This document shows positions 24,934 through 62,559 of a stretch of DNA of 64,000 nucleotides, in pieces. The notes under the pieces were generated by a model, which saw only the letters and a program-made list of their open reading frames with translations, did not search any database and was not told where the DNA came from. A program made the translations under genes and the position numbers. Origin of the DNA: Octopus bimaculoides (taxonomy: Eukaryota). Location: NCBI RefSeq assembly GCF_001194135.2, contig NC_068983.1, positions 128,498,211-128,562,210 of the forward strand. The letters run 5' to 3'. Positions within the stretch are counted from its first letter, which is position 1, and each line of letters starts with the position of its first letter.

Positions 24934-26433
24934 TAACAACAACAATACTAATAATATGTGAATACGAATCTATAGACATATATTGCACACATATTTGTAT
25001 AAATCATTATATATGTATATATTATTTTTATTGTTGGGCAAAATGTGTTGTGGAATTACAAGTGTGATTAGCAGCAGCACCGAAGTGGTGTAGTACTCGT
25101 CAGTTCATATTGGATTACATCGTGGATAATGTGCTTGAAAAGAAGACTTCTGCATAGTAATGTGACGGCCATTGCAGGCAGACGTAGATTATTGAGGGCT
25201 GTGAGGAAAATGAAAGAAACTCGTGTATCCATTGGTAGGAATATGAGGAAACAGTATAGAAAATACATTTGAAAATATAATTGAAAATATATTTGAGTTC
25301 TAAATAATGCTGGAGTATAAATCTGAAAGACTAAAAATTCTATTCTAATCCACTGAAGAAAGAAAGAAATGTGGAATTCGTATTTTTATTTGAGAATACG
25401 TTTTCCTGGCTTTCAGATGGAAAGGAACAGAAAGAGATTTCGGTTGGTGAAGTAAATGTTTAACGCAATGCGTCGAGAACGTTAGGGTTGCTACTAGCAA
25501 TGTACAGATTCGTTCACATTCAAAATCATATAATTTAGTATTGAATTTATCTGAACGTAAACATGATTGTTTCAGCTCACGTTGAATCTTGTATTACGAC
25601 TTTGGGCATCAATTCAGATATTCGATTCTTAGCAATTTTAGCTGCAGGATTTGAATTACATTTTTAATGGTCTTAGTCAAATGTAAGGTGTTAACTTGAA
25701 ATTCATTTTCATGCTGGCAAGAGTGGAAGCTATAATGCTCAATGGCATTTTTCTGAAGATACACTTCAGAATCTGTAAAATAATTACTGCCGAATGGCTT
25801 TTATGCAACAGATTGAGTCATAATTTTATTCTTATTTCAGTCTTCAATTAATAGTGCACAAAAATCACATGCGGAAAGTATTTTGTTTATTTATCAAAAT
25901 ACATATAATCATATTCTATTATTTGTCCCCATCGTTGTGCCAGAAGATCAATTCCACGATTATAACTTCTGGCTGGTTTAAACATCTCCCTGCGTCAGTA
26001 CACAAACTCATATCCACGTTGTTCAAACTCCGTTCGTGCTGGAAATAAATCATGGTTCGGAAAAGTGGGTAATCTCATGCTAATAGGTTGGTGAGGCAGA
26101 AACATCAAGCCCACCAAGTTTCTCAAGTTTTCGCGTCGGTGCATTGATAGAGTGTGTAAGGGCTCAGCGATGCTGTTCGACTTCACATCTACGATTGACC
26201 AATGCCGAGTACCGGATTTGTACGTAATCTCTTAGAGTAGCTGTAGAACACACGTCGTATTCCCCAAAAGGTAGGACTACAATATTATTAGAAAACAACG
26301 AAGTGATTCGTTCATAACCACTTTCTAATTTTATTGAAAACAGTGTTAATTATATCAATATCAGGTTAAGCAAGGGATCATTATTTACATTATTTACATT
26401 TAACGGATATTTGTCCTCATCTTGTTTGCTGTT

Positions 26434-26466
26434 AACACAACTTTTCGGCTGCCTTCATCAGGCGTC
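26434..26466 (-). ncRNA. Degenerate minimal hammerhead ribozyme
   Basis: Reverse complement: GACGC CTGATGA A GGC A GCC GAAA AGTT GTGTT. Core intact, stem II collapsed, ACGT changed to AAGT. Confidence 0.5.
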
Positions 26467-26513
26467 TTGGGGAATTTTCGAACCTAGGTTCTCATACTTA
26501 AGGTATTTTTCGA

Positions 26514-26592
<79 letters not shown>

Positions 26593-26647
26593 TTTACTGC
26601 CTGGAATCGAACTCGGAATCTTGGGGTTAGTAGCCANNNNNNNNNNC

Positions 26648-26746
<99 letters not shown>

Positions 26747-26804
26747 CAACAGCAACATTGAAAAATACCTTAGGAATGAGAACCCAAGTTCGAAATTTCC
26801 CGAA

Positions 26805-26850
26805 GACACCCAATGAAGGCTGGAGAGTATATCAGCCGAAACGTTGTGTT
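26805..26850 (+). ncRNA. Minimal type I hammerhead motif with mutated core
   Basis: GACAC CCAATGA A GGCTG-gagagtatat-CAGCC GAAACGTT GTGTT. Stems I and II pair, but CUGAUGA is changed to CCAAUGA. Confidence 0.6.
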
Positions 26851-27032
26851 AACAACAAACAAGATGAGGGCAAATATCCGTCAAATGTAAATAATGTAAA
26901 TAATGTACATAATTTCTCATCTCTTAAATATAGAATTTATTAAGCAAAGGCTGTTGAGATATATTTGAACCTGTTTAAAAGGCTTCTATCGTTACATTAC
27001 TGTGAAATGCATCTCGTACAGTGTTGTTGTTG

Positions 27033-33500: not shown

Positions 33501-33999
33501 TAATGATACAGCATAAATAGGGTGGGGAAGCTCTTTCTGGCAATCATCCACCACTGTTGACATTTTTCTTGTTCATGAGGATCATATTGTTGAACATGAA
33601 TGTACTTCGGTACAAAAACAAACGGAGCCGCGATATGATAACAAGTAAAAAAAAAATAAATAAATAAATCACTTCAGTTATTTCAAAAAAGTACAGTAAC
33701 CTCACAAACTACCATATAACAGTTGAAAATGGTTTCATAAAGTATTGTTTAATGCAAGAAATCGATATTTTAAATTTAAAAAGAGAAATGAACCACATAT
33801 GATGTATATAGCAAATATAGTAGGGTTTACAAGGAACCAAAGAGATGTTTCTCAAATAAAAATAAATAAATACGATAGCCAAACTACCATAAATAAATAA
33901 GATGGCCAAAAATAACATGAAATTCTACATTATTTACATTATTTTCATTTGACGGATATTTTTCCTCATCAACAAAATAAAAAATGTCTTGAGGGAACA

Positions 34000-40916: not shown

Positions 40917-42107
40917 TGCTGATTATCTATGACTACCTTCCATCTATTTACAAACTTTTTAGTCCCATCAATGTAAAACTCCTTTGGTTTCAAAGGGAAG
41001 AACTCTGAAACGTCAGTTTCCACCTCCTCCTGGCTTGCGAAAGTTATGTCACCCATATCCTTTTGTAAACTACGAAACAAATGGTAGTCTGAAGGTGCAA
41101 CGTTGGGAGAATCAGGTGTATGAGGAATTTTTTCCCAACCAGGCTCTTCGATCTTCTGTGGTGTGATTTTGCAGTGTGGGGTGACGCATTGGCCTGATGA
41201 AAAATCACTCCTTTTCGATTCACTAAAGCGGGTCATTTTTCTTCTTGGTTCAAACGCTCTAATTGCTGACAGAAGATTTCAGCATTGATTGTTGCATTAG
41301 GTGGTAACGATTCAAAGTGAATTGCTCCTTTGCAATCCCATCAGATACAGAAGAATCTTTTCCCTATGAAGTTCCATTCTCGGTTGTGGTTGATGTTTTT
41401 TCCCTTTTACCAAGCCACTGTTTACAACGTTTGACATTTCTACAGAGGATACATTTTTCGTTAGCAGTCACAAGTCTATCTAAAAAAGGCGAAATGAGTT
41501 CGCGAGAATAGAGAGAAGAGCAGGTGTCAACTCGGAATTTGCGGTTGCTTTCGGATAATCCATGAGGCACCCATTTTCTAAGTTTAGGAAGCTTTCCAAG
41601 TTGATGAAGATGGCGATGAACAGTTGTATGGTTTGAACCAAGCTTTATTGCCAATTCTTTAACTGATGATGCAGGATTTTTTTCAAGTAATGGCTCAAGG
41701 AGCTTATCATCAAACTCAACTGGACGTCCTGTTCGATCGTCACCTTCAAGGCTGAACTCTCCACTTCTGAATTTTGCAAACAATCTTCTGCAAGTTCTTT
41801 CATTCAAGCATTCTTTCCCTTAAACTGAGTGTATGTGTCGAGTTGCTTCAGCTGCAGAGTTTCCTTTTTTGTACTCATAAAGTATTATGTGCCTTAAATG
41901 CTTTTTGGATACTTTCATGTTATAAAGGGTTTTAATGAAAGATATTTTAATTCAATCATTTAGTAAAATAATATCTAAGTAGTTTAAATGTACACACATA
42001 CATAAAAATAAGTTTTAATTCCATTAGACATTGTAAAATACTATTAAATTTCATTCAATTTTTAAAAAAAAGGTAAAATCGGACAGAATTTATGGGATGA
42101 CCTGATA
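40907..42107 (-). mobile_element. Mariner transposon with one intact TIR and a pseudogenised transposase (41918 to about 40907)
   Basis: MKVSKKHLRHIILYEYKKG, FRSGEFSL, WVPHGL, VTANEK, HQANASPH and PNVAPSDYHLFRSLQ. TIR cggacagaatttatgggatgacctga followed by TA ends at 42107. In-frame stop and frameshifts. Confidence 0.95.
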
Positions 42108-47400: not shown

Positions 47401-48402
47401 CCCATTCATTTTTCTAAATTATTTGGTATAAATCAAATTGAACATGCTTATTTCTTTGTATTCGAACTATTAGAGTTATTTTGCAATTCATACAGTGCAA
47501 CCTTAAACATGTATATAGTATTTCCCTAAATAATTGATCCACTTATTTCGGCTAATGACTTATTCACGAATATACCAACACTAGCGTCGCTGAGTGTTAT
47601 ATTCTCTGGGAACACACAAAAGCCTTTTTCAGAGTTATGTACTTTGAATTGTTATTATCTCATATCTGATTAGCCTGCTAGTACGTAACATGCTTCACGA
47701 TTTTAGTATACCGTATTAGTATTTCCTCCTAAGTTCTATATTCTCTGGAAATGCATTAAAGCCCTTTTCGGGGCTACTTTATTTGAATTCTTACTATCAG
47801 GTTACACATTTCATGTTATTACATAACTATCTTCACAATTTGGGTGTTCATAACTTATTGGGAATTCCTAAAAACAAGATCATGTGCAAGATAGTTCGTT
47901 ATTCTCAGTAAATGCACAGAAACCGTTTTAAGGGATACATATTTTGTATTGTTGTTATTCGAATAACGAAACAATTATGAGAACGGCACCAAGGGATAAG
48001 CTCCGCTTACCCCAGAATTACCGAGTACGTCAGCAAATATATAATATAGGAGGAAAATGTTAAGCCTAAAATTGGATTTAATCATTGCTGAGCGGTATCG
48101 ATGGTTACCATCAGCAAAATTTGGAATATATCCTTTTAGAATAAAGAAAGCTGCGTTTAATAACGTCGTCTTCTTACACAATATCTGGAAAACGAAACAA
48201 ATGTGTGTCAGTAATAAAATGAATTTGGGTTATAAAATGGGTACTCTGTCTAAACAAAGACATAAGCAAATTGCTACGTATTGAATGGACATTACTATAC
48301 TTTAGAATTAAAACCACTGGAAAAGGAATGATTCAAAACTTCTTCGGCTTTATTTACATTATTTACATTTGACGGATATTTTTTCTCATCTCGTTTGCTA
48401 TT

Positions 48403-48448
48403 AACATAACATTTCGGCTGATATACACTCCAGCCTTCATCAGCTGTC
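48403..48448 (-). ncRNA. Minimal type I hammerhead ribozyme motif, catalytic core intact
   Basis: Reverse complement: GACAG CTGATGA A GGCTG-gagtgtatat-CAGCC GAAA TGTT ATGTT. CUGAUGA and GAAA are intact. Palindromic ACGT is changed to ATGT. Confidence 0.7.
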
Positions 48449-48898
48449 TTAAGGAAGTTTCGAAGCTGGGTTCACATTCCTAAGGTATTTTTCGATGTTA
48501 TTCTCTACATCTACACAGGAAAGTTAGTTAGTTTGAAAGATGAGCTAGTTTATGATGGAGTGTCTCTATATATCTCCATTGAAGTCTAATGTCGGCTTCG
48601 TAATGATTAGATAATACAGTTCTATTTCTAACAGATGAGGAATTATGTACCTTATTTACATTAAATATCCGTCAAATGAAAATAATCTAATACTGCACAT
48701 AATTCCTCATCTTTTCATTATAGTACTGTATTATCGAATCGGTACGGAGCCGACATTAGACTTCAATGGAGATATATAGAGAAACTCCATCAAAAACTAG
48801 CTGGTCTTTCAAACCATCTAACTTTCCTGTGTAGGTCTACAAAAATAACATCGAAAAATATCTTAGGGATGAGAACCCAGGTTCAAAAGTATCCCCAA

Positions 48899-48944
48899 GA
48901 GATCCGATGAAGGCCGGAGGGTATATCAGCCGAAACGTTGTGTT
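48899..48944 (+). ncRNA. Minimal type I hammerhead ribozyme motif, one core substitution
   Basis: GAGAT CCGATGA A GGCCG-gagggtatat-CAGCC GAAACGTT GTGTT. Confidence 0.65.
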
Positions 48945-49218
48945 AGCAACAAAAAAGATGAGGACAAATATCCGTCAAATGTAAATAATGTAAATAATGT
49001 ACATAACTCCCCATCTCTTAATTATAGAACTGCATTCTTCGGCTTTCTTTGTACATTTTATTTCTTAAATTTGGGAAATGAATCTACATTAACGTTACAT
49101 TAAACTAAGAAAGATTGCGGTTATATAAATATGTATAATTATATATAGCTATAATATGTGTTTGCATGTATGTTTTTGGACGTGTCGATATGTACGTACG
49201 TATGCATGTATGTGTGAA

Positions 49219-49595
49219 GGAGCAATGGCCTACTGGCTAGGGCAGCGTACTCACAATCGTAGTATCGCTATTTCGATTCTCACGCCGGGCGTTGTGAGTG
49301 TTTATTGAGCGACAACACCTAAAAGCTCCACGAGGCTCCGGCAGGGAGTAGTGGTGAACCATGCTGTGTTCTTTCACCACAACTATTTCACATACTTTCT
49401 TTATGTTTCTGTTATACCTGTATTTCAAAGGGCCAGCCTTGTCGCACTCTGCGTCACGCTGAATTTCCCCTAGAACTACGTTAAGGCTACACCTGTCTGT
49501 GGAGTGCTCAACCACTTGCAAGTTAATTTCACGAGTAAGCTATTCCGTTGATCGGATCAACTGGAACTCTTGTCGTCGCAACTGACAGACTGCCA
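49219..49595 (+). mobile_element. tRNA-derived SINE family C, full length, in an (ATGT)n context
   Basis: Head ggagcaatggcctactgg (A box) ... tttcgattc (B box), a ~300-nt body and an (ATGT)n tail. Confidence 0.75.
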
Positions 49596-57534: not shown

Positions 57535-60085
57535 AAATAGACATTACTGCAGCACCAACAGCAGAAGAACTGGAAGAATTCTGGAAACAAATATGGTCGG
57601 TGAAGCAACAACCCCAGAAAAGGACCATTAAAACAAAAGAACTTAGCACCTGAGCAACTCTGGGCTCCTATAACAACTGAAGAGGTCACCCAGACACTGC
57701 AAAGACTAAGCAACTGGAAGGCACCTGGACACAACAAGATCCCCAGCTTCTGGTTAAAACACCTACCAGGAATGCATAAAAAGCTGGCAGAAAACTTTAA
57801 CAACATACTAGCAGAGCCAGAGAAAATACTTGAATGGTTCACGAAAGGGAAAATCATCTTAATCCCCAAATCCACGGAAACAGAGGAACCACAAAACGAT
57901 AGACCTATAAACTGTCTCCCTACGATCTACAAAGCCTTTACTGCAATAATATCGCAGAGATTGAGTAAGCACCTGGAAAATAACAACCTGTTTCCAGAAG
58001 AGCAGAAGGGACGCTGCAATGGCTCATACGGCTGTAAAGATCAATTATTGATCAATAAAGCCATAACTGAAGACAGCCGCAGAAAGAAGAAAGGCCTCAG
58101 TATGGCCTGGGTGAACTACCAAAAGGCTTTCAACAGTGTTCCCCACACGTGGATTCTGGAAACACTAGCCATAAACAAGGTGGCACCAATTATTATAAAA
58201 TACATAATGCACTCAATGAACAAATGGCAGACAGTGCTACAGCTCCAAACAAAAGAGGGACTTGTGAAAACGAAAGCCATCCCCATTAGAAGAGGAATAT
58301 TCCAGGAAGACACGCTCTCTCCACTCCTGTTCTGCCTGGCACTCACACCTTTAACTGAATTGCTAAATAGAACTGGATGCGGTTACAAATGCAACGGGAA
58401 AACAGTCAGCCACCTTCTATATATGGATGACCTAAAATGATATGCTAAAAATGACAAACAGCTAGAAACACTACTATAGACAATACACGGCTTTACCAAG
58501 GAAATAGAAATGAAATTCGGATTACAAAAATGTGCCAAAGCAACCATGAAAAGAGGAAAATTAGTTAAAAGTAGCAATATAACACTAGATAAAGCCAATG
58601 AAATAAGAGAACTAGACGAAAGCCAACCATACAAGTATTTGGGAGTCAATGAACTAGATAGGATACAACATACACAAATGAAAGAAAAAATAAAGAAAGA
58701 GAACTGTAGACGAGTTAGATCAATACTAAAAACAGAGCTCAATGCTAAAAACAAGATAATGGGTATCAACACTTTAGCTGTCCTAGTTATAAGCTACAGC
58801 TACAACATCCTTAACTGGACACTAAACGAACTACCTAAAATAGACAGGANNNNNNNNNNNNNNNNNNNNNNNNNNNNNNNNNNNNNNNNNNNNNNNNNNN
58901 NNNNNNNNNNNNNNNNNNNNNNNNNNNNNNNNNNNNNNNNNNNNNNNNNNNNNNNNNNNNNNNNNNNNNNNNNNNNNNNNNNNNNNNNNNNNNNNNNNNN
59001 NNNNNNNNNNNNNNNNNNNNNNNNNNNNNNNNNNNNNNNNNNNNNNNNNNNNNNNNNNNNNNNNNNNNNNNNNNNNNNNNNNNNNNNNNNNNNNNNNNNN
59101 NNNNNNNNNNNNNNNNNNNNNNNNNNNNNNNNNNNNNNNNNNNNNNNNNNNNNNNNNNNNNNNNNNNNNNNNNNNNNNNNNNNNNNNNNNNNNNNNNNNN
59201 NNNNNNNNNNNNNNNNNNNNNNNNNNNNNNNNNNNNNNNNNNNNNNNNNNNNNNNNNNNNNNNNNNNNNNNNNNNNNNNNNNNNNNNNNNNNNNNNNNNN
59301 NNNNNNNNNNNNNNNNNNNNNNNNNNNNNNNNNNNNNNNNNNNNNNNNNNNNNNNNNNNNNNNNNNNNNNNNNNNNNNNNNNNNNNNNNNNNNNNNNNNN
59401 NNNNNNNNNNNNNNNNNNNNNNNNNNNNNNNNNNNNNNNNNNNNNNNNNNNNNNNNNNNNNNNNNNNNNNNNNNNNNNNNNNNNNNNNNNNNNNNNNNNN
59501 NNNNNNNNNNNNNNNNNNNNNNNNNCAGACACGACAGAGCTGGGACCTATATACACTGGAAGCTATGCCAACACGATGGAATAACAACAGAAAAAAGATG
59601 GTATAAACACACGCCAGAAAAGGTGACAGAAAACGAGAAAGCAACCATACTCTGGGATATGCCAATACACACAGATAGAGAAATTAAGGCAAATAGACCA
59701 GATATAGTTGTCAAAGATCATGAAGTAAAAAAATGCTTTCTAATTGATGACAACGTTTCTCTAAAAGAAATGGAAAAACTTTCAAAATACAAAGACCTGG
59801 AAATAGAGGTAACTCGAATTTGGAATCTAAACACAGAAACAATTCCTATCATAGTAGGTGCCTTAGGTATAATAAAAACATATTCAGACAAATACATAAA
59901 ACAAACACCAGGACTTACAAATATATATAACATACCGAAAATTGCACTACTCGGCACTGCACACATCCTACGCAAAACACTTTCAATACAGTAACCATAA
60001 GAACACCACAGCACATACCCAAGGCGCACAGAGCTGGGCTCGGTAGTGAAGTGAAAGCACGTTATAAAAATAAAACTACTGAACA
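57535..60085 (+). mobile_element. Best-preserved R4/Dong-like non-LTR retrotransposon (5'-truncated), flanked by (TAA)n
   Basis: RT and REL motifs, a 3' UTR at 59995-60085 and an (AAT)n tail. Gap at 58850-59525. Confidence 0.95.
57772..59994 (+). pseudogene. RT-REL polyprotein remnant of the R4/Dong-like element
   Basis: RPINCLPTIYK, EQKG, KDQLLINK, YQKAFNSVPH, GIFQEDTLSPLLF, LYMDDLK, RHD...IHWKLC, RPDIVV and KLSKYKDL. In-frame stops at 58438-58440 and 58477-58479. Confidence 0.92.
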
Positions 60086-62000: not shown

Positions 62001-62087
62001 TTGTAACTATTGCTTAGCGGCAGGACCGTTCCGAAAACATTCTCCAATATATTTTTCCATCCTTTTACACAATATGACAATCACTTA

Positions 62088-62195
62088 TTTACATTATTTA
62101 CATTCGACGGATATTTGTCCTCATCTTGTTTTTGTTAACACAACGTTTCGGCTGATATATCCTCCATAATTCCTTATCTCTTAAATATAGAACTG
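62088..62195. mobile_element. Short inverted Penelope-type repeat insertion with 15-bp TSD
   Basis: The minus arm ends at 62165 and holds half of the hammerhead (cagccgaaacgttgtgtt). It is joined to the plus tail ataattccttatctcttaaatatagaactg. TSD tatga(c/a)aatcactta at 62073-62087 and 62196-62210. Confidence 0.8.
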
Positions 62196-62559
62196 TATGA
62201 AAATCACTTATCTAACTAGAGGAACTGTAGGAGAATATCTATTTACTTCCTCATGCTCAGTCAGCCCGAGGCACAGTAGTCATCCATGCGTAGATGTCGC
62301 CACTGAATTTGGTTTTTGCAAAGAATCTACAGGTAATAACACCACCACCACCTCCAACACCAACACCAACAAGAACAATAACAATGCCAAATGTCAAACC
62401 AAGACGAGCATCACACGTGACAACTCCATCAACAACAGTAACGAAACCAGCAACGACAATAACGACAATAGTATAATAATCATCAGCAGTAATGAGATCA
62501 ACAATAGTGCTGACTGCTACTACAGTATCAACAGTAATACGTTTTACGTAGGCTGTAAC

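What the first reader, a model, noticed from the sequence alone, without database searches (positions are those of the whole stretch)
48340..49046. A ~690-bp foldback of two hammerhead-bearing ~304-nt units inserted as one event (12-bp TSD)
Seen: two ~300-nt arms in inverted orientation, roughly 85% identical by eye, each with a hammerhead-like motif near its outer end. The whole structure sits between identical 12-mers ttcttcggcttt. The plus arm restarts its own beginning: aaatatccgtcaaatg recurs at 48663 and 48966, and g(c/t)acataa(t/c)tcc at 48695 and 48999, a period of 303-304 nt. Established: Penelope-like elements carry minimal type I hammerheads in their pseudo-LTRs and often insert with an inverted copy. 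Metazoan non-LTR retrozymes are similar-sized tandem hammerhead units that can yield circular RNAs. Inference: this is a non-autonomous Penelope/retrozyme unit copied from a tandem or circular template. I cannot tell whether this family has been described.
Basis: partly seen in the sequence, partly recalled or inferred. Interest (0 to 1): 0.85.

Follow-up and report, generated by a model that had tools for sequence, protein, structure and literature searches.

The report
Penelope-type hammerhead repeat inserted as foldback
This is an old, decayed insertion of a short non-coding retroelement that depends on Penelope-like elements and carries a minimal hammerhead ribozyme motif. Its two inverted arms and 12-bp duplication match the known Penelope insertion pattern, so it is a tidy example of a known kind, not a new one.

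Summary
At 48352-49034, two inverted arms (311 and 372 nt, 84% identical) sit between exact 12-bp duplications, and the direct arm restarts its own beginning after 303 nt.

Two more insertions in the window (26.4 kb, 62.1 kb) and relatives fetched from public assemblies have the same build. Each has an inverted, 5'-truncated arm that ends at a fixed inner site. The direct arm carries an extra 35-37 nt "tail". The duplications are 10-12 bp. This is the published signature of Penelope-like element (PLE) insertion, including the two reverse-transcription start sites that define the tail.

The hammerhead is the PLE-type minimal form: GACAC/CUGAUGA/A/GGCUGG-8 nt-UCAGCC/GAAA/CG/UU^GUGUU. It has no helix III, and Rfam does not detect it. 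A descriptor for this form found nothing in 24-36 Mb of random sequence. Sister families with intact tandem copies show three compensatory base pairs.

Every copy in the window carries at least one lesion. The direct arm reads CCGAUGA, which changes the essential U4.

No RT/GIY-YIG ORF is present, so the element is non-autonomous. The host is probably Octopus bimaculoides or a close relative.

Verdict: a new member of a known kind, of low to moderate interest. A circular RNA template remains untested.

The parts
48340..48351 (.). Left copy of the 12-bp target-site duplication, ttcttcggcttt.
   Evidence: Identical to 49035-49046 (D8).
48352..48662 (-). Inverted (L) arm, 311 nt, about 1.03 units. 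Its outer end stops at ...AATGTAAATAATGTAAAT, the inner RT start site, so it has no tail.
   Evidence: 84% identical to the R arm; nhmmer E = 2.8e-109.
48403..48448 (-). Minimal hammerhead motif of the L arm: GACAG/CUGAUGA/A/GGCUGG-AGUGUAUA-UCAGCC/GAAA/UG/UU^AUGUU. The core is intact. The first helix I pair is G.A, and the 15.2-16.2 pair is U.G.
   Evidence: Read from the sequence; alignments; helices I and II appear in the unconstrained fold.
48663..49034 (+). Direct (R) arm, 372 nt, equal to 1.23 units of 303 nt.
48899..48944 (+). Hammerhead motif of the R arm with lesions: CCGAUGA (U4 changed to C), helix I 5' strand GAGAU, and a C.A mismatch in helix II. The predicted cleavage site would lie between 48939 and 48940.
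   Evidence: The unconstrained fold does not recover the hammerhead helices.
48966..49034 (+). Restart of the unit: a pLTR-like partial second copy of unit positions 1-70.
   Evidence: Spacing 303 (D4); 84.5% identity over 71 nt.
48998..49034 (+). The 37-nt tail, GTACATAACTCCCCATCTCTTAATTATAGAACTGCA. It is present on the R arm and absent from the outer end of the L arm.
   Evidence: Alignment. The same asymmetry occurs at 26.4 kb, at 62.1 kb, and in L005 and L007. It matches the PLE tail described in PMC8557442 and PMC11167929.
49035..49046 (.). Right copy of the 12-bp TSD.
26366..26950 (.). Second insertion of the family.
- TSD ttaagcaaGgg (26366-26376) and ttaagcaaAgg (26940-26950).
- L arm 26379-26516 (-), without tail. 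CUGAUGA is intact, but 13 nt of helix II and its loop are deleted.
- R arm 26746-26939 (+), with tail. All hammerhead helices are intact (26805-26850), but the core reads CCAAUGA.
- The centre holds (TTA)n, a tRNA-like piece, a 10-N gap and (TAA)n.
62079..62211 (.). Third insertion, strongly 5'-truncated.
- TSD aatcacttat (62079-62088 and 62202-62211), overlapping the element end by microhomology.
- L arm about 62085-62165 (-), starting inside hammerhead loop 2 and lacking the tail.
- R arm 62166-62199 (+), which is essentially the tail alone.
33928..33970 (-). Solo 5'-truncated fragment of about 43 nt that ends at the inner (tail-less) site.
   Evidence: E = 1.3e-10.

Best explanation
The foldback is one insertion of a short (about 303-nt unit), non-coding retroelement that is moved in trans by a Penelope-like element (PLE).

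**Shown**
- The insertion is bounded by a 12-bp TSD.
- Both arms have their 3' ends outward and their 5' ends at the centre.
- The arms are 5'-truncated independently in different insertions.
- One arm ends at an inner site and the other 35-37 nt further out (the tail).
- The 3' module carries a PLE-type minimal hammerhead.

**Inferred mechanism**
1. A PLE RT/GIY-YIG complex nicks both target strands 10-12 bp apart.
2. It primes cDNA on each strand from an RNA longer than one unit, either two RNA molecules or one multimer.
3. One strand starts at the outer internal RT start site and the other at the inner one.
4. The two cDNAs meet head to head and are joined.
5. Fill-in of the staggered nicks produces the TSD.

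The RNA template came from a partial-tandem (pLTR-like) master copy, because the direct arm runs 1.23 units.

In sister families the hammerhead (CUGAUGA-A-helix II-GAAA-CG-UU^) is intact and tandem, so it could cleave as a dimer. In the window it is a relic. All copies are 4-9% from their consensus and each carries at least one inactivating lesion.

The host is probably Octopus bimaculoides or a close relative.
For: **Architecture**
- Three TSD-bounded insertions in the window (48.3, 26.4 and 62.1 kb) and two fetched relatives (L005, L007) share the same build: one inverted tail-less arm, one tail-bearing arm, and TSDs of 10-12 bp.
- L-arm lengths are 311, at least 137, and 81 nt. R-arm lengths are 372, at least 194, and 34 nt. 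This shows independent 5' truncation while the 3' ends stay fixed.

**Literature**
- PLE insertions form partial tandems (pLTRs), often with an inverted 5'-truncated copy and a 30-40-bp tail at one end only (PMC8557442).
- A purified PLE protein cleaves and extends both strands. It starts reverse transcription at two internal sites whose spacing equals the tail (PMC11167929).

**Hammerhead**
- The family consensus meets a min-HHR descriptor with these terms: helix I of 5 bp, one extra nt between A9 and G10.1, helix II of 6 bp closed by G10.1-C11.1, GAAA, palindromic ACGU, and UU at the cleavage site.
- That descriptor gave 0 hits in 36 Mb (helix I >=4) and 0 in 24 Mb (helix I >=3) of random sequence with matched composition.
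- These are the features listed for PLE min-HHRs in PMC4209133.
- Sister families give five strict hits: 2.7 units of 129 nt in L005 and more than 3 units of about 114 nt in L006.
- Across 10 sequences, three pairs change on both sides (CG/UA in helix I; CG/GC and CG/UA in helix II). 84% of cells are paired, against 17-48% when the partner is slid. The core positions C3, A6, G8, A9, A13-A15.1, G16.2 and U16.1 are invariant.

**Non-autonomy**
- No ORF longer than 44 aa lies inside the element.
- No GIY-YIG motif is found in six frames of the window.

**Host**
- The module's open frame matches Octopus bimaculoides A0A0L8FV75 at 82% identity, and also a mis-annotated exon of an O. bimaculoides gene model.
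- PLEs are abundant and recently active in Octopus (PMC13282606).
Against: - No autonomous PLE sharing this 3' module was found. The window has none, and the representative-protein search returned only short spurious ORFs (34-274 aa), no long RT/GIY-YIG protein.
- Rfam hammerhead models do not match. They also miss the intact tandem copies in L005, so this negative result carries little weight.
- No single copy in the window is an intact ribozyme. Three of five window-family (family A) DNA copies with the core box read C, or its CpG-decay product, at the essential U4. The family's master may therefore already have been catalytically dead.
- Within the window copies alone there is no covariation.
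- The two-strand priming model comes from in vitro work on a lizard PLE, not from this host.
Confidence: 0.82

Rival explanations
1. The element is a DNA transposon of the MITE/foldback type, with terminal inverted repeats of about 300 bp, moved by a transposase.
For: There are long inverted arms flanked by a TSD. A mariner-like ORF lies in the window at 41364-41807.
Against: - The termini are not symmetric. One end carries a 35-37-nt extension in 5 of 6 insertions.
- TSD length varies from 10 to 12 bp, and reaches about 17 bp in L006.
- The arms are truncated independently from the centre while the outer ends stay fixed.
- The direct arm is a partial tandem.
- Sister families are head-to-tail arrays with hammerheads.
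Confidence: 0.03
2. The foldback is an assembly artefact, such as a chimeric join or a palindromic misassembly in a short-read draft.
For: The window is a gappy draft with 3362 N. PLE structures are known to confuse short-read assemblies (PMC8557442). The 26.4-kb copy has an N gap at its centre.
Against: - The arms differ at 46 of 310 aligned positions, so they are not a duplicated read pile.
- There is an exact 12-bp TSD.
- The same build occurs at three loci here and in independent assemblies and runs: L005 from ENA, and L003 and L007 from Logan.
Confidence: 0.03
3. The element is a true non-LTR retrozyme. A 303-nt circular RNA, made by hammerhead self-cleavage and ligation, was copied by rolling-circle reverse transcription, and the inverted arm is secondary.
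For: - The unit size of 303 nt and the low GC fit retrozymes (about 170-400 nt; PMC7229834).
- The direct arm exceeds one unit.
- Both arms begin 26-50 nt downstream of the hammerhead cleavage position of the preceding unit.
- Sister families form real tandem arrays with intact hammerheads.
- A 12-bp stem (48704-48715 with 48953-48964) closes the circular fold (I12, 39).
Against: - Neither arm in the window has two hammerheads in direct tandem.
- The hammerhead is the PLE minimal type, not the canonical type I form.
- The circular fold is only weakly better than shuffled sequence (z = -1.9).
- The fixed 3' ends and the tail are explained by PLE internal initiation without any circle.
- Hammerhead catalysis was dispensable for PLE insertion in vitro.
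- This reading partly overlaps the best explanation, because retrozymes are now viewed as PLE dependants.
Confidence: 0.12
4. The hammerhead-like motif has no role in this family. The element is simply a PLE-dependent SINE whose 3' module is kept for RT recognition, and the ribozyme boxes are an inherited, already dead remnant.
For: - U4 is C, or its CpG-decay product, in 48R, 26R and L007.
- Both arms of L003 have UUUCGAAGRA in place of the CUGAUGA box, yet the element still inserted as a foldback.
- Hammerhead mutants did not affect PLE insertion in vitro (PMC11167929).
- Conservation extends about 45 nt beyond the hammerhead into the AC-rich AACAACAAACAAGAUGAGGAC region.
Against: - Families B and C and the copies in L009 and L010 keep U4 and the whole core.
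- Three compensatory pairs maintain helices I and II, which argues for selection on the ribozyme fold in the wider superfamily.
Confidence: 0.3

Closest known systems
Minimal type I hammerheads of Penelope-like elements (Cervera & de la Pena 2014, PMC4209133; dimer cleavage in Lunse et al. 2016, as cited in PMC6765202)
   Same: - CUGANGA and GAAA boxes.
- An unpaired nucleotide between A9 and G10.1.
- A G10.1-C11.1 closing pair.
- A longish helix II (6 bp) and a short helix I (3-5 bp).
- No helix III, with palindromic ACGU allowing dimer pairing.
- Frequent occurrence as two motifs 100-700 bp apart on opposite strands. Here the two motifs are about 460 bp apart.
   Different: Here the motif sits in a non-coding unit of about 303 nt, not in the pLTR of a roughly 3-kb RT/GIY-YIG element. 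All copies in the window are mutated. Cleavage was not assayed.
PLE insertion architecture and internal RT initiation (Craig et al. 2021, PMC8557442; Frangieh et al. 2024, PMC11167929)
   Same: - Partial tandem (pLTR).
- An inverted 5'-truncated copy at the 5' side.
- A 30-40-bp tail on one end only (37 nt here, 35 nt in L005).
- Two fixed 3' ends, corresponding to two RT start sites.
- The hammerhead lies a short distance upstream of those sites: the cleavage position is 58 and 95 nt upstream here, against about 85-92 nt in the lizard PLE PAc.
   Different: No RT/GIY-YIG ORF is present. The target sites show no clear ATT motif. The host is a cephalopod, where this has not been examined in the papers I could search.
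Metazoan non-LTR retrozymes (Cervera & de la Pena 2020, PMC7229834; Li, Clavereau & Pollet 2026 preprint, 10.64898/2026.07.22.740005)
   Same: Non-autonomous, low GC, a monomer of about 300 nt, hammerhead-bearing, TSDs longer than 4 bp, and thought to be mobilised by PLEs. Sister families L005 and L006 are genuine tandem arrays.
   Different: The window copies span 1.0-1.2 units with one hammerhead per arm, not arrays of two or more. The hammerhead is the minimal PLE variant, not the canonical type I form with loop-loop contacts. The sister-family units (about 114-129 nt) are smaller than the published 170-400 nt range. No circular RNA evidence exists.
Schistosome Sm-alpha/Sj-alpha SINE-like hammerhead retroposons (as summarised in PMC6765202)
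   Same: A short non-coding dispersed repeat that combines a promoter-like head with a hammerhead. A tRNA-like piece lies sense-oriented upstream of the module in L005 and possibly in the 26.4-kb copy.
   Different: ARAGORN and Rfam find no tRNA, so the tRNA-like head is only a visual impression. The 48-kb unit has no recognisable head.

Membership tests
PLE-type minimal hammerhead (min-HHR) | CUGANGA and GAAA catalytic boxes at the right spacing. | tested here: met
   - Intact in 48L (CUGAUGA...GAAA) and in 26L.
- 48R reads CCGAUGA and 26R reads CCAAUGA.
- Intact in all L005 and L006 tandem units.
PLE-type minimal hammerhead (min-HHR) | An unpaired nucleotide between A9 and G10.1, and a G10.1-C11.1 pair closing helix II. 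| tested here: met
   The extra A and the GGCUGG/UCAGCC helix occur in every copy that spans it. Pairs 19-38 and 20-37 are paired in 9-10 of 10 sequences.
PLE-type minimal hammerhead (min-HHR) | No helix III, or a tiny one, with palindromic 15.2-16.2, followed by U and H at the cleavage site. | tested here: met
   GAAA-CG-UU is present. G16.2 and U16.1 are invariant across 10 sequences.
PLE-type minimal hammerhead (min-HHR) | A short helix I flanking the core. | tested here: met
   - GACAC/GUGUU (5 bp) in the consensus, 26R and 26L.
- Weakened in 48L and lost in 48R.
- 3 bp in families B and C.
PLE-type minimal hammerhead (min-HHR) | Consensus families with compensatory changes. | tested here: met
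   - None within the window copies alone.
- Three both-sided changes across families.
- Covariation score 0.226 against 0.152 +/- 0.025 for shuffles; 1 of 500 shuffles reach it.
PLE-type minimal hammerhead (min-HHR) | Self-cleavage, usually as a dimer. | not testable with these tools
   This needs in vitro transcription of dimeric constructs.
Rfam hammerhead families (RF00163, RF00008, RF02276 and others) | A score at or above the family's gathering threshold. | tested here: not met
   - No hit at the gathering score over the window.
- No hit at E<=10 around 48 kb.
- A single 13.9-bit Hammerhead_II hit at noise level at 26443-26483.
- Control: the intact tandem min-HHRs in L005 are also missed at E<=1.
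Penelope-like element (autonomous) | A single ORF with a telomerase-like RT and a GIY-YIG endonuclease. | tested here: not met
   - No ORF longer than 44 aa in the element.
- No GIY...YIG pattern in six frames of the window.
- The only RT in the window (57772-59994) matches generic RVT_1 and shows no GIY...YIG pattern; its downstream ORF 59530-59991 has no Pfam hit.
PLE-type insertion (architecture) | A partial tandem (pLTR) plus an adjacent inverted 5'-truncated copy. | tested here: met
   The R arm spans 1.23 units. An inverted L arm is present at three window loci and in L005, L007 and L003.
PLE-type insertion (architecture) | A 30-40-bp tail present at one end, reflecting two internal RT start sites. 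| tested here: met
   A 37-nt tail occurs on one arm only at 48, 26 and 62 kb and in L007; a 35-nt tail occurs in L005. L003 has tails on both arms.
PLE-type insertion (architecture) | Sequence shared with the pLTR and ORF start of an autonomous PLE in the same genome. | tested here: inconclusive
   - The sense frame is open through the whole 188-nt module (62 codons; shuffle P = 0.022).
- Its geometry resembles the lizard PLE PAc.
- No long PLE protein begins with it among 1.84 billion representatives.
- The host genome could not be searched.
Metazoan non-LTR retrozyme | A head-to-tail array of two or more units, each with a type I hammerhead. | tested here: not met
   The window arms span 1.03-1.23 units with one motif each. 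The feature is met by sister families L005 (2.7 x 129 nt) and L006 (more than 3 x about 114 nt).
Metazoan non-LTR retrozyme | Expression as circular RNAs of 170-400 nt. | not testable with these tools
   No transcriptome access. The circular fold gives z = -1.9 only.
MITE / foldback DNA transposon | Symmetric terminal inverted repeats and a TSD of fixed length. | tested here: not met
   The ends are asymmetric because of the tail. TSDs are 10, 11 and 12 bp. The arms are truncated from the centre.

The most novel reading that the evidence does not exclude
Two linked readings remain open.

(a) This octopus family kept amplifying from a master whose hammerhead was already dead (U4C). That would be in vivo evidence that ribozyme catalysis is dispensable for trans-mobilisation by PLEs.

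(b) Five of six foldbacks pair one tail-bearing end with one tail-less end. This could be a genomic footprint of a coordinated, dimeric PLE complex that primes both strands while using its two RT start sites asymmetrically.

In addition, the sister families would be unusually small (114-129 nt) tRNA-headed retrozyme/SINE hybrids.
Probability: 0.2. Interest if true: 0.45.

Novelty: new member of a known kind. Interest (0 to 1): 0.28.

Why it matters
The locus adds a clean, TSD-bounded cephalopod example to the picture that hammerhead-bearing short repeats in animals depend on Penelope-like elements.

It shows the two-start-site "tail" signature, described in vitro for a lizard PLE, in old genomic insertions of an unrelated host.

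Practical points:
- Rfam-based annotation misses this minimal hammerhead class completely.
- Copies of the repeat have been annotated as protein, both as a UniProt entry and as an exon of a dystrobrevin gene model.
- Such foldbacks trigger false microRNA-like hits.

None of this changes current understanding of the mechanism.

Tried and rejected
**Rfam.** The gathering-score scan of the window gave 0 hits. At E<=10 around 48 kb, only long-hairpin miRNA models (MIR7533, MIR807) matched, and they matched the foldback itself. Around 26 kb there was only a 13.9-bit Hammerhead_II hit.

**Cleavage at the conserved CCGUC^AAAUG (48973-48975).** This would need a 3-bp helix III closing a 36-nt loop, and no helix I can form with the sequence 5' of the core. 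Rejected.

**A type III model with cleavage at AACAUC^G upstream and the long GGAAU...AUUCC hairpin as helix I.** Rejected, because the 15.2-16.2 pair is C.A in most copies.

**Searches for more copies.**
- The metagenome scan gave one chance hit in a phage-like coding contig (L001).
- Scans of bacterial and archaeal genomes and of viral contigs gave none.
- A 20-kb Octopus vulgaris locus (L002) holds no copy.
- Exact-protein look-ups of window ORFs found nothing.
- The P0086 locus was too long to fetch.

**Left-arm versus right-arm lineages.** Pairwise identities are star-like at 85-90%, with the two arms of one locus no closer to each other than to arms at other loci. This gives no evidence that the foldback itself is the transposing unit.

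**Global RNA structure.** Circular and linear folds of the unit are only z = -1.1 to -1.9.

**Other checks.**
- The RT at 57.7-60 kb is a generic non-LTR RT with best homologues at 56% identity, so it is not a visible PLE partner.
- Pfam scans of ORF calls in L005 failed on in-frame stops, apart from one RVT_1 fragment.
Full report
**1. The observation**

- The minus-strand arm (48352-48662, 311 nt) and the plus-strand arm (48663-49034, 372 nt) align at 264 of 313 columns, or 84%, with 3 gap columns. BLAST gives E = 4e-79, and the repeat finder reports inverted pairs at 85-89%.
- The structure is bounded by ttcttcggcttt at 48340-48351 and 49035-49046, identical at 12 of 12 positions.
- The plus arm restarts after 303 nt: AAATATCCGTCAAATG occurs at 48663 and 48966, and 71 nt re-align at 84.5%.
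- A 24-nt signature of the family occurs 7 times in the window against 0.01 expected.

The window is an AT-rich (33% GC), gappy draft of a eukaryote with many microsatellites.

**2. More copies with the same build**

BLAST and nhmmer find the family at four loci only.

*Insertion at 26.4 kb.* It has TSDs ttaagcaaGgg and ttaagcaaAgg, an inverted arm at 26379-26516 and a direct arm at 26746-26939. Its centre is occupied by (TTA)n, a tRNA-like piece, a 10-N gap and (TAA)n.

*Insertion at 62.1 kb.* It has the TSD aatcacttat, an inverted arm of about 81 nt that starts inside hammerhead loop 2, and a direct arm of 34 nt.

*Fragment at 33928-33970.* This is a solo 43-nt piece.

*Shared features.*
- In all three insertions the inverted arm ends at ...AATGTAAATAA(TG).
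- The direct arm continues for about 37 nt more: GTACATAAYTCCYCATCTCTTAAWTATAGAACTGYAT.
- The outer (3') ends are fixed, while the central (5') ends vary from insertion to insertion.

*Divergence.* Pairwise identities among arms are 85-90% and star-like. The two arms of one locus are no closer to each other than to arms at other loci. Each copy is 4-9% from the five-copy consensus. These are old insertions from similar sources, and the two arms of a locus may well have been identical at insertion.

**3. What the architecture means**

This is the published Penelope-like element (PLE) insertion pattern.
- PLE insertions form partial tandems (pseudo-LTRs), often with an inverted 5'-truncated copy at the 5' side. 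A 30-40-bp "tail" is often present at one end only (Craig et al. 2021, PMC8557442).
- Frangieh et al. 2024 (PMC11167929) showed that a purified PLE protein cleaves and extends both DNA strands. It starts reverse transcription at two internal sites, and the spacing between those sites is the tail.

Fixed 3' ends at two sites 37 nt apart, variable 5' truncation, TSDs of variable length (10-12 bp) and head-to-head arms are what two target-primed cDNAs, one per strand, would leave.

A snap-back or hairpin origin would not give the inverted arm a fixed outer end. A transposase would not give asymmetric termini or variable TSDs.

**4. The hammerhead**

Rfam finds no hammerhead at the gathering score or at E<=10. 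Reading the sequence against the features listed by Cervera and de la Pena 2014 (PMC4209133) gives a PLE-type minimal type I motif:

5'-GACAC | CUGAUGA | A | GGCUGG-(8 nt)-UCAGCC | GAAA | CG | UU^ | GUGUU-3'

Its features are:
- helix I of 5 bp;
- one unpaired nucleotide between A9 and G10.1;
- helix II of 6 bp closed by G10.1-C11.1;
- no helix III, but a palindromic ACGU that can pair between two copies.

On the plus arm the predicted cleavage site lies between 48939 and 48940. It is not at the conserved GUC at 48973-48975, where no helix I can form.

*Chance expectation.* A descriptor with these general features gave 0 matches in 36 Mb (helix I >=4) and 0 in 24 Mb (helix I >=3) of random sequence with the window's dinucleotide content. 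The family consensus passes it, and 26R passes it with a relaxed core. Unconstrained folding of the consensus recovers helices I and II.

*Lesions.* No copy in the window is intact.

| Copy | Lesion |
|---|---|
| 48R | CCGAUGA, and helix I broken |
| 48L | G.A at the first helix I pair |
| 26R | CCAAUGA |
| 26L | 13 nt of helix II and its loop deleted |
| 62L | 5'-truncated inside loop 2 |

Source. Within these copies alone there is no covariation.

**5. Relatives from elsewhere**

DNA pattern scans of metagenomes, prokaryotic genomes and viral contigs gave no true copies.

*The open frame as a handle.* The sense frame of the 3' module is open over all 62 codons of the consensus (shuffle P = 0.022). 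Its translation matched two Octopus bimaculoides entries: the "uncharacterized protein" A0A0L8FV75 at 82% identity, and a stretch of a dystrobrevin-beta gene model in assembly GCA_001194135.2. The host is therefore probably that octopus or a close relative, and copies of the repeat have been annotated as protein.

A search of 1.84 billion representative proteins returned 62 short spurious ORFs (34-274 aa), several with two or three repeats of the motif. None was a long RT/GIY-YIG protein. Their contigs could be fetched.

*L005 (ENA ERZ21867824).*
- 2.7 head-to-tail units of 129 nt, 98% alike, with two strict min-HHR hits.
- An inverted tail-less arm and a 35-nt tail on the direct end.
- A 12-bp TSD, CTTAAAAAYTGT.

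*L006 (same assembly).* More than 3 units of about 114 nt, with three strict hits.

*Logan contigs L003, L007, L009 and L010.* These carry variants like the window family (family A).
- L007 is a foldback with a 10-bp TSD, one tail-bearing end and one tail-less end.
- L003 has tails on both ends and lacks the CUGAUGA box in both arms.

*Control for Rfam.* Rfam also misses the intact L005 hammerheads at E<=1. The Rfam negative in the window therefore carries little weight.

*Covariation.* In a 10-sequence alignment of the motif, three pairs change on both sides: CG/UA in helix I, and CG/GC and CG/UA in helix II. 84% of cells pair, against 17-48% when the partner is slid. The covariation score exceeds 499 of 500 shuffles. 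The catalytic positions are invariant apart from U4 and G5 in the window family and G12 in two decayed Logan copies (L007, L009). This shuffle control is known to be lenient for related sequences, so I treat it as moderate support. The descriptor statistics are the stronger evidence.

**6. An open point: core position 4**

- It is C in 48R and L007 (CCGAUGA) and in 26R (CCAAUGA, plausibly CpG decay of CCG).
- It is U in 48L, 26L, L009, L010 and all family B and C units.

U is therefore ancestral for the superfamily. The window family, however, may have spread from a master with a dead ribozyme. That would agree with the in vitro finding that hammerhead mutants do not impair PLE insertion. Five copies cannot decide this.

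**7. Geometry compared with a characterised PLE**

In the lizard PLE PAc, the hammerhead overlaps the ORF start, the cut site is 26 nt into the ORF, and reverse transcription starts 111-118 nt into the ORF. Here the predicted cut is 58 nt upstream of the inner 3' end and 95 nt upstream of the outer one.

An AC-rich stretch, AACAACAAACAAGAUGAGGAC, follows the cut and is conserved between families. I infer, without proof, that the module is the pLTR/ORF-start region of an autonomous PLE that was captured as the RT-recognition tail of a non-coding element. A tRNA-like piece lies upstream of the module in L005 and possibly at 26590-26637, which hints at a SINE-like head. ARAGORN and Rfam do not confirm it.

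**8. Comparison with known kinds**

The element works like a PLE-dependent non-autonomous retroelement.
- It passes the architectural tests for a PLE-type insertion and the motif tests for a PLE min-HHR.
- It fails the test for an autonomous PLE, because it has no ORF.
- It fails the strict test for a non-LTR retrozyme, because it is not a tandem array of two or more hammerheads. Its sister families pass that test.

That animal retrozymes are PLE dependants has been proposed since 2020 and is argued in a 2026 preprint. PLEs are abundant and recently active in Octopus. I found no paper describing hammerhead-bearing PLE dependants in cephalopods, but the literature search covers open-access text only.

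**9. Verdict**

This is a real feature, correctly read by the first stage, and a new member of a known kind. It is a decayed repeat and not an active ribozyme locus. Interest is low to moderate.

Noticed in passing
L005 9705-10393 (ENA ERZ21867824, ctg121048l): A sister family: 2.7 tandem units of 129 nt, 98% alike, each with an intact minimal hammerhead. It also has an inverted tail-less arm, a tRNA-like antisense piece between the arms, a 35-nt tail and a 12-bp TSD. The units are smaller than the published 170-400 nt retrozyme range.
   Followed up: partly
L006 3085-3560 (ENA ERZ21867824, ctg117157l): A third family: more than 3 tandem units of about 114 nt with intact minimal hammerheads. 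The tail sequence appears only after the last unit and is not part of the repeating unit. The TSD is about 17 bp.
   Followed up: partly
window 48905, 26811; L007 about 1056: The essential hammerhead position U4 is C in three of five window-family DNA copies. In both window foldbacks that have two motifs, the tail-bearing arm has C and the tail-less arm has U. This is unexplained.
   Followed up: partly
window 26776-26940 (+), and the consensus of the 3' module: The sense frame of the module is open end to end. It has been annotated as protein in Octopus bimaculoides, both as UniProt A0A0L8FV75 and as a stretch of a dystrobrevin-beta isoform model. These are likely annotation artefacts.
   Followed up: partly
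window 48554-48791: Sub-threshold Rfam matches to plant microRNA precursor models (MIR7533 at 85 bits, MIR807 at 57 bits) on both strands. They are caused only by the long foldback hairpin.
   Followed up: yes
window 26516-26743: The centre of the 26.4-kb foldback holds mirror-image (TTA)n and (TAA)n microsatellites at the same unit position in both arms. It also holds a tRNA T-arm-like piece (26590-26637) and a 10-N gap. An (ATT)n run also precedes the module in L009.
   Followed up: no
window 41364-41807 (-): A mariner/Mos1-type transposase N-terminal fragment. Its best named homologues are SETMAR-like proteins of Limulus at 72% identity, and a 139-aa hypothetical protein of Octopus vulgaris with the Mos1 transposase HTH domain (79% identity over 40% of the query).
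   Followed up: partly
window 57772-59994 (+): ORFs of a non-LTR retrotransposon reverse transcriptase (RVT_1), interrupted by an N gap. The best database homologues are only 56% identical. There is no GIY-YIG domain, so it is not the PLE partner.
   Followed up: partly
window 47590-47959: Three direct copies of a 70-nt segment (66-74% identical) spaced 139 and 161 nt apart, just upstream of the foldback. They were not identified.
   Followed up: no
window 49216-49390: A SINE-like sequence with a B-box-like TTCGATTCTCACGCCGGGC motif, followed by GT-rich microsatellites. ARAGORN calls no tRNA.
   Followed up: no
L001 2702-2725: The only metagenome match to the 24-nt family signature lies inside a coding, phage-like contig (SMUX01082388.1). 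It is a chance match.
   Followed up: yes
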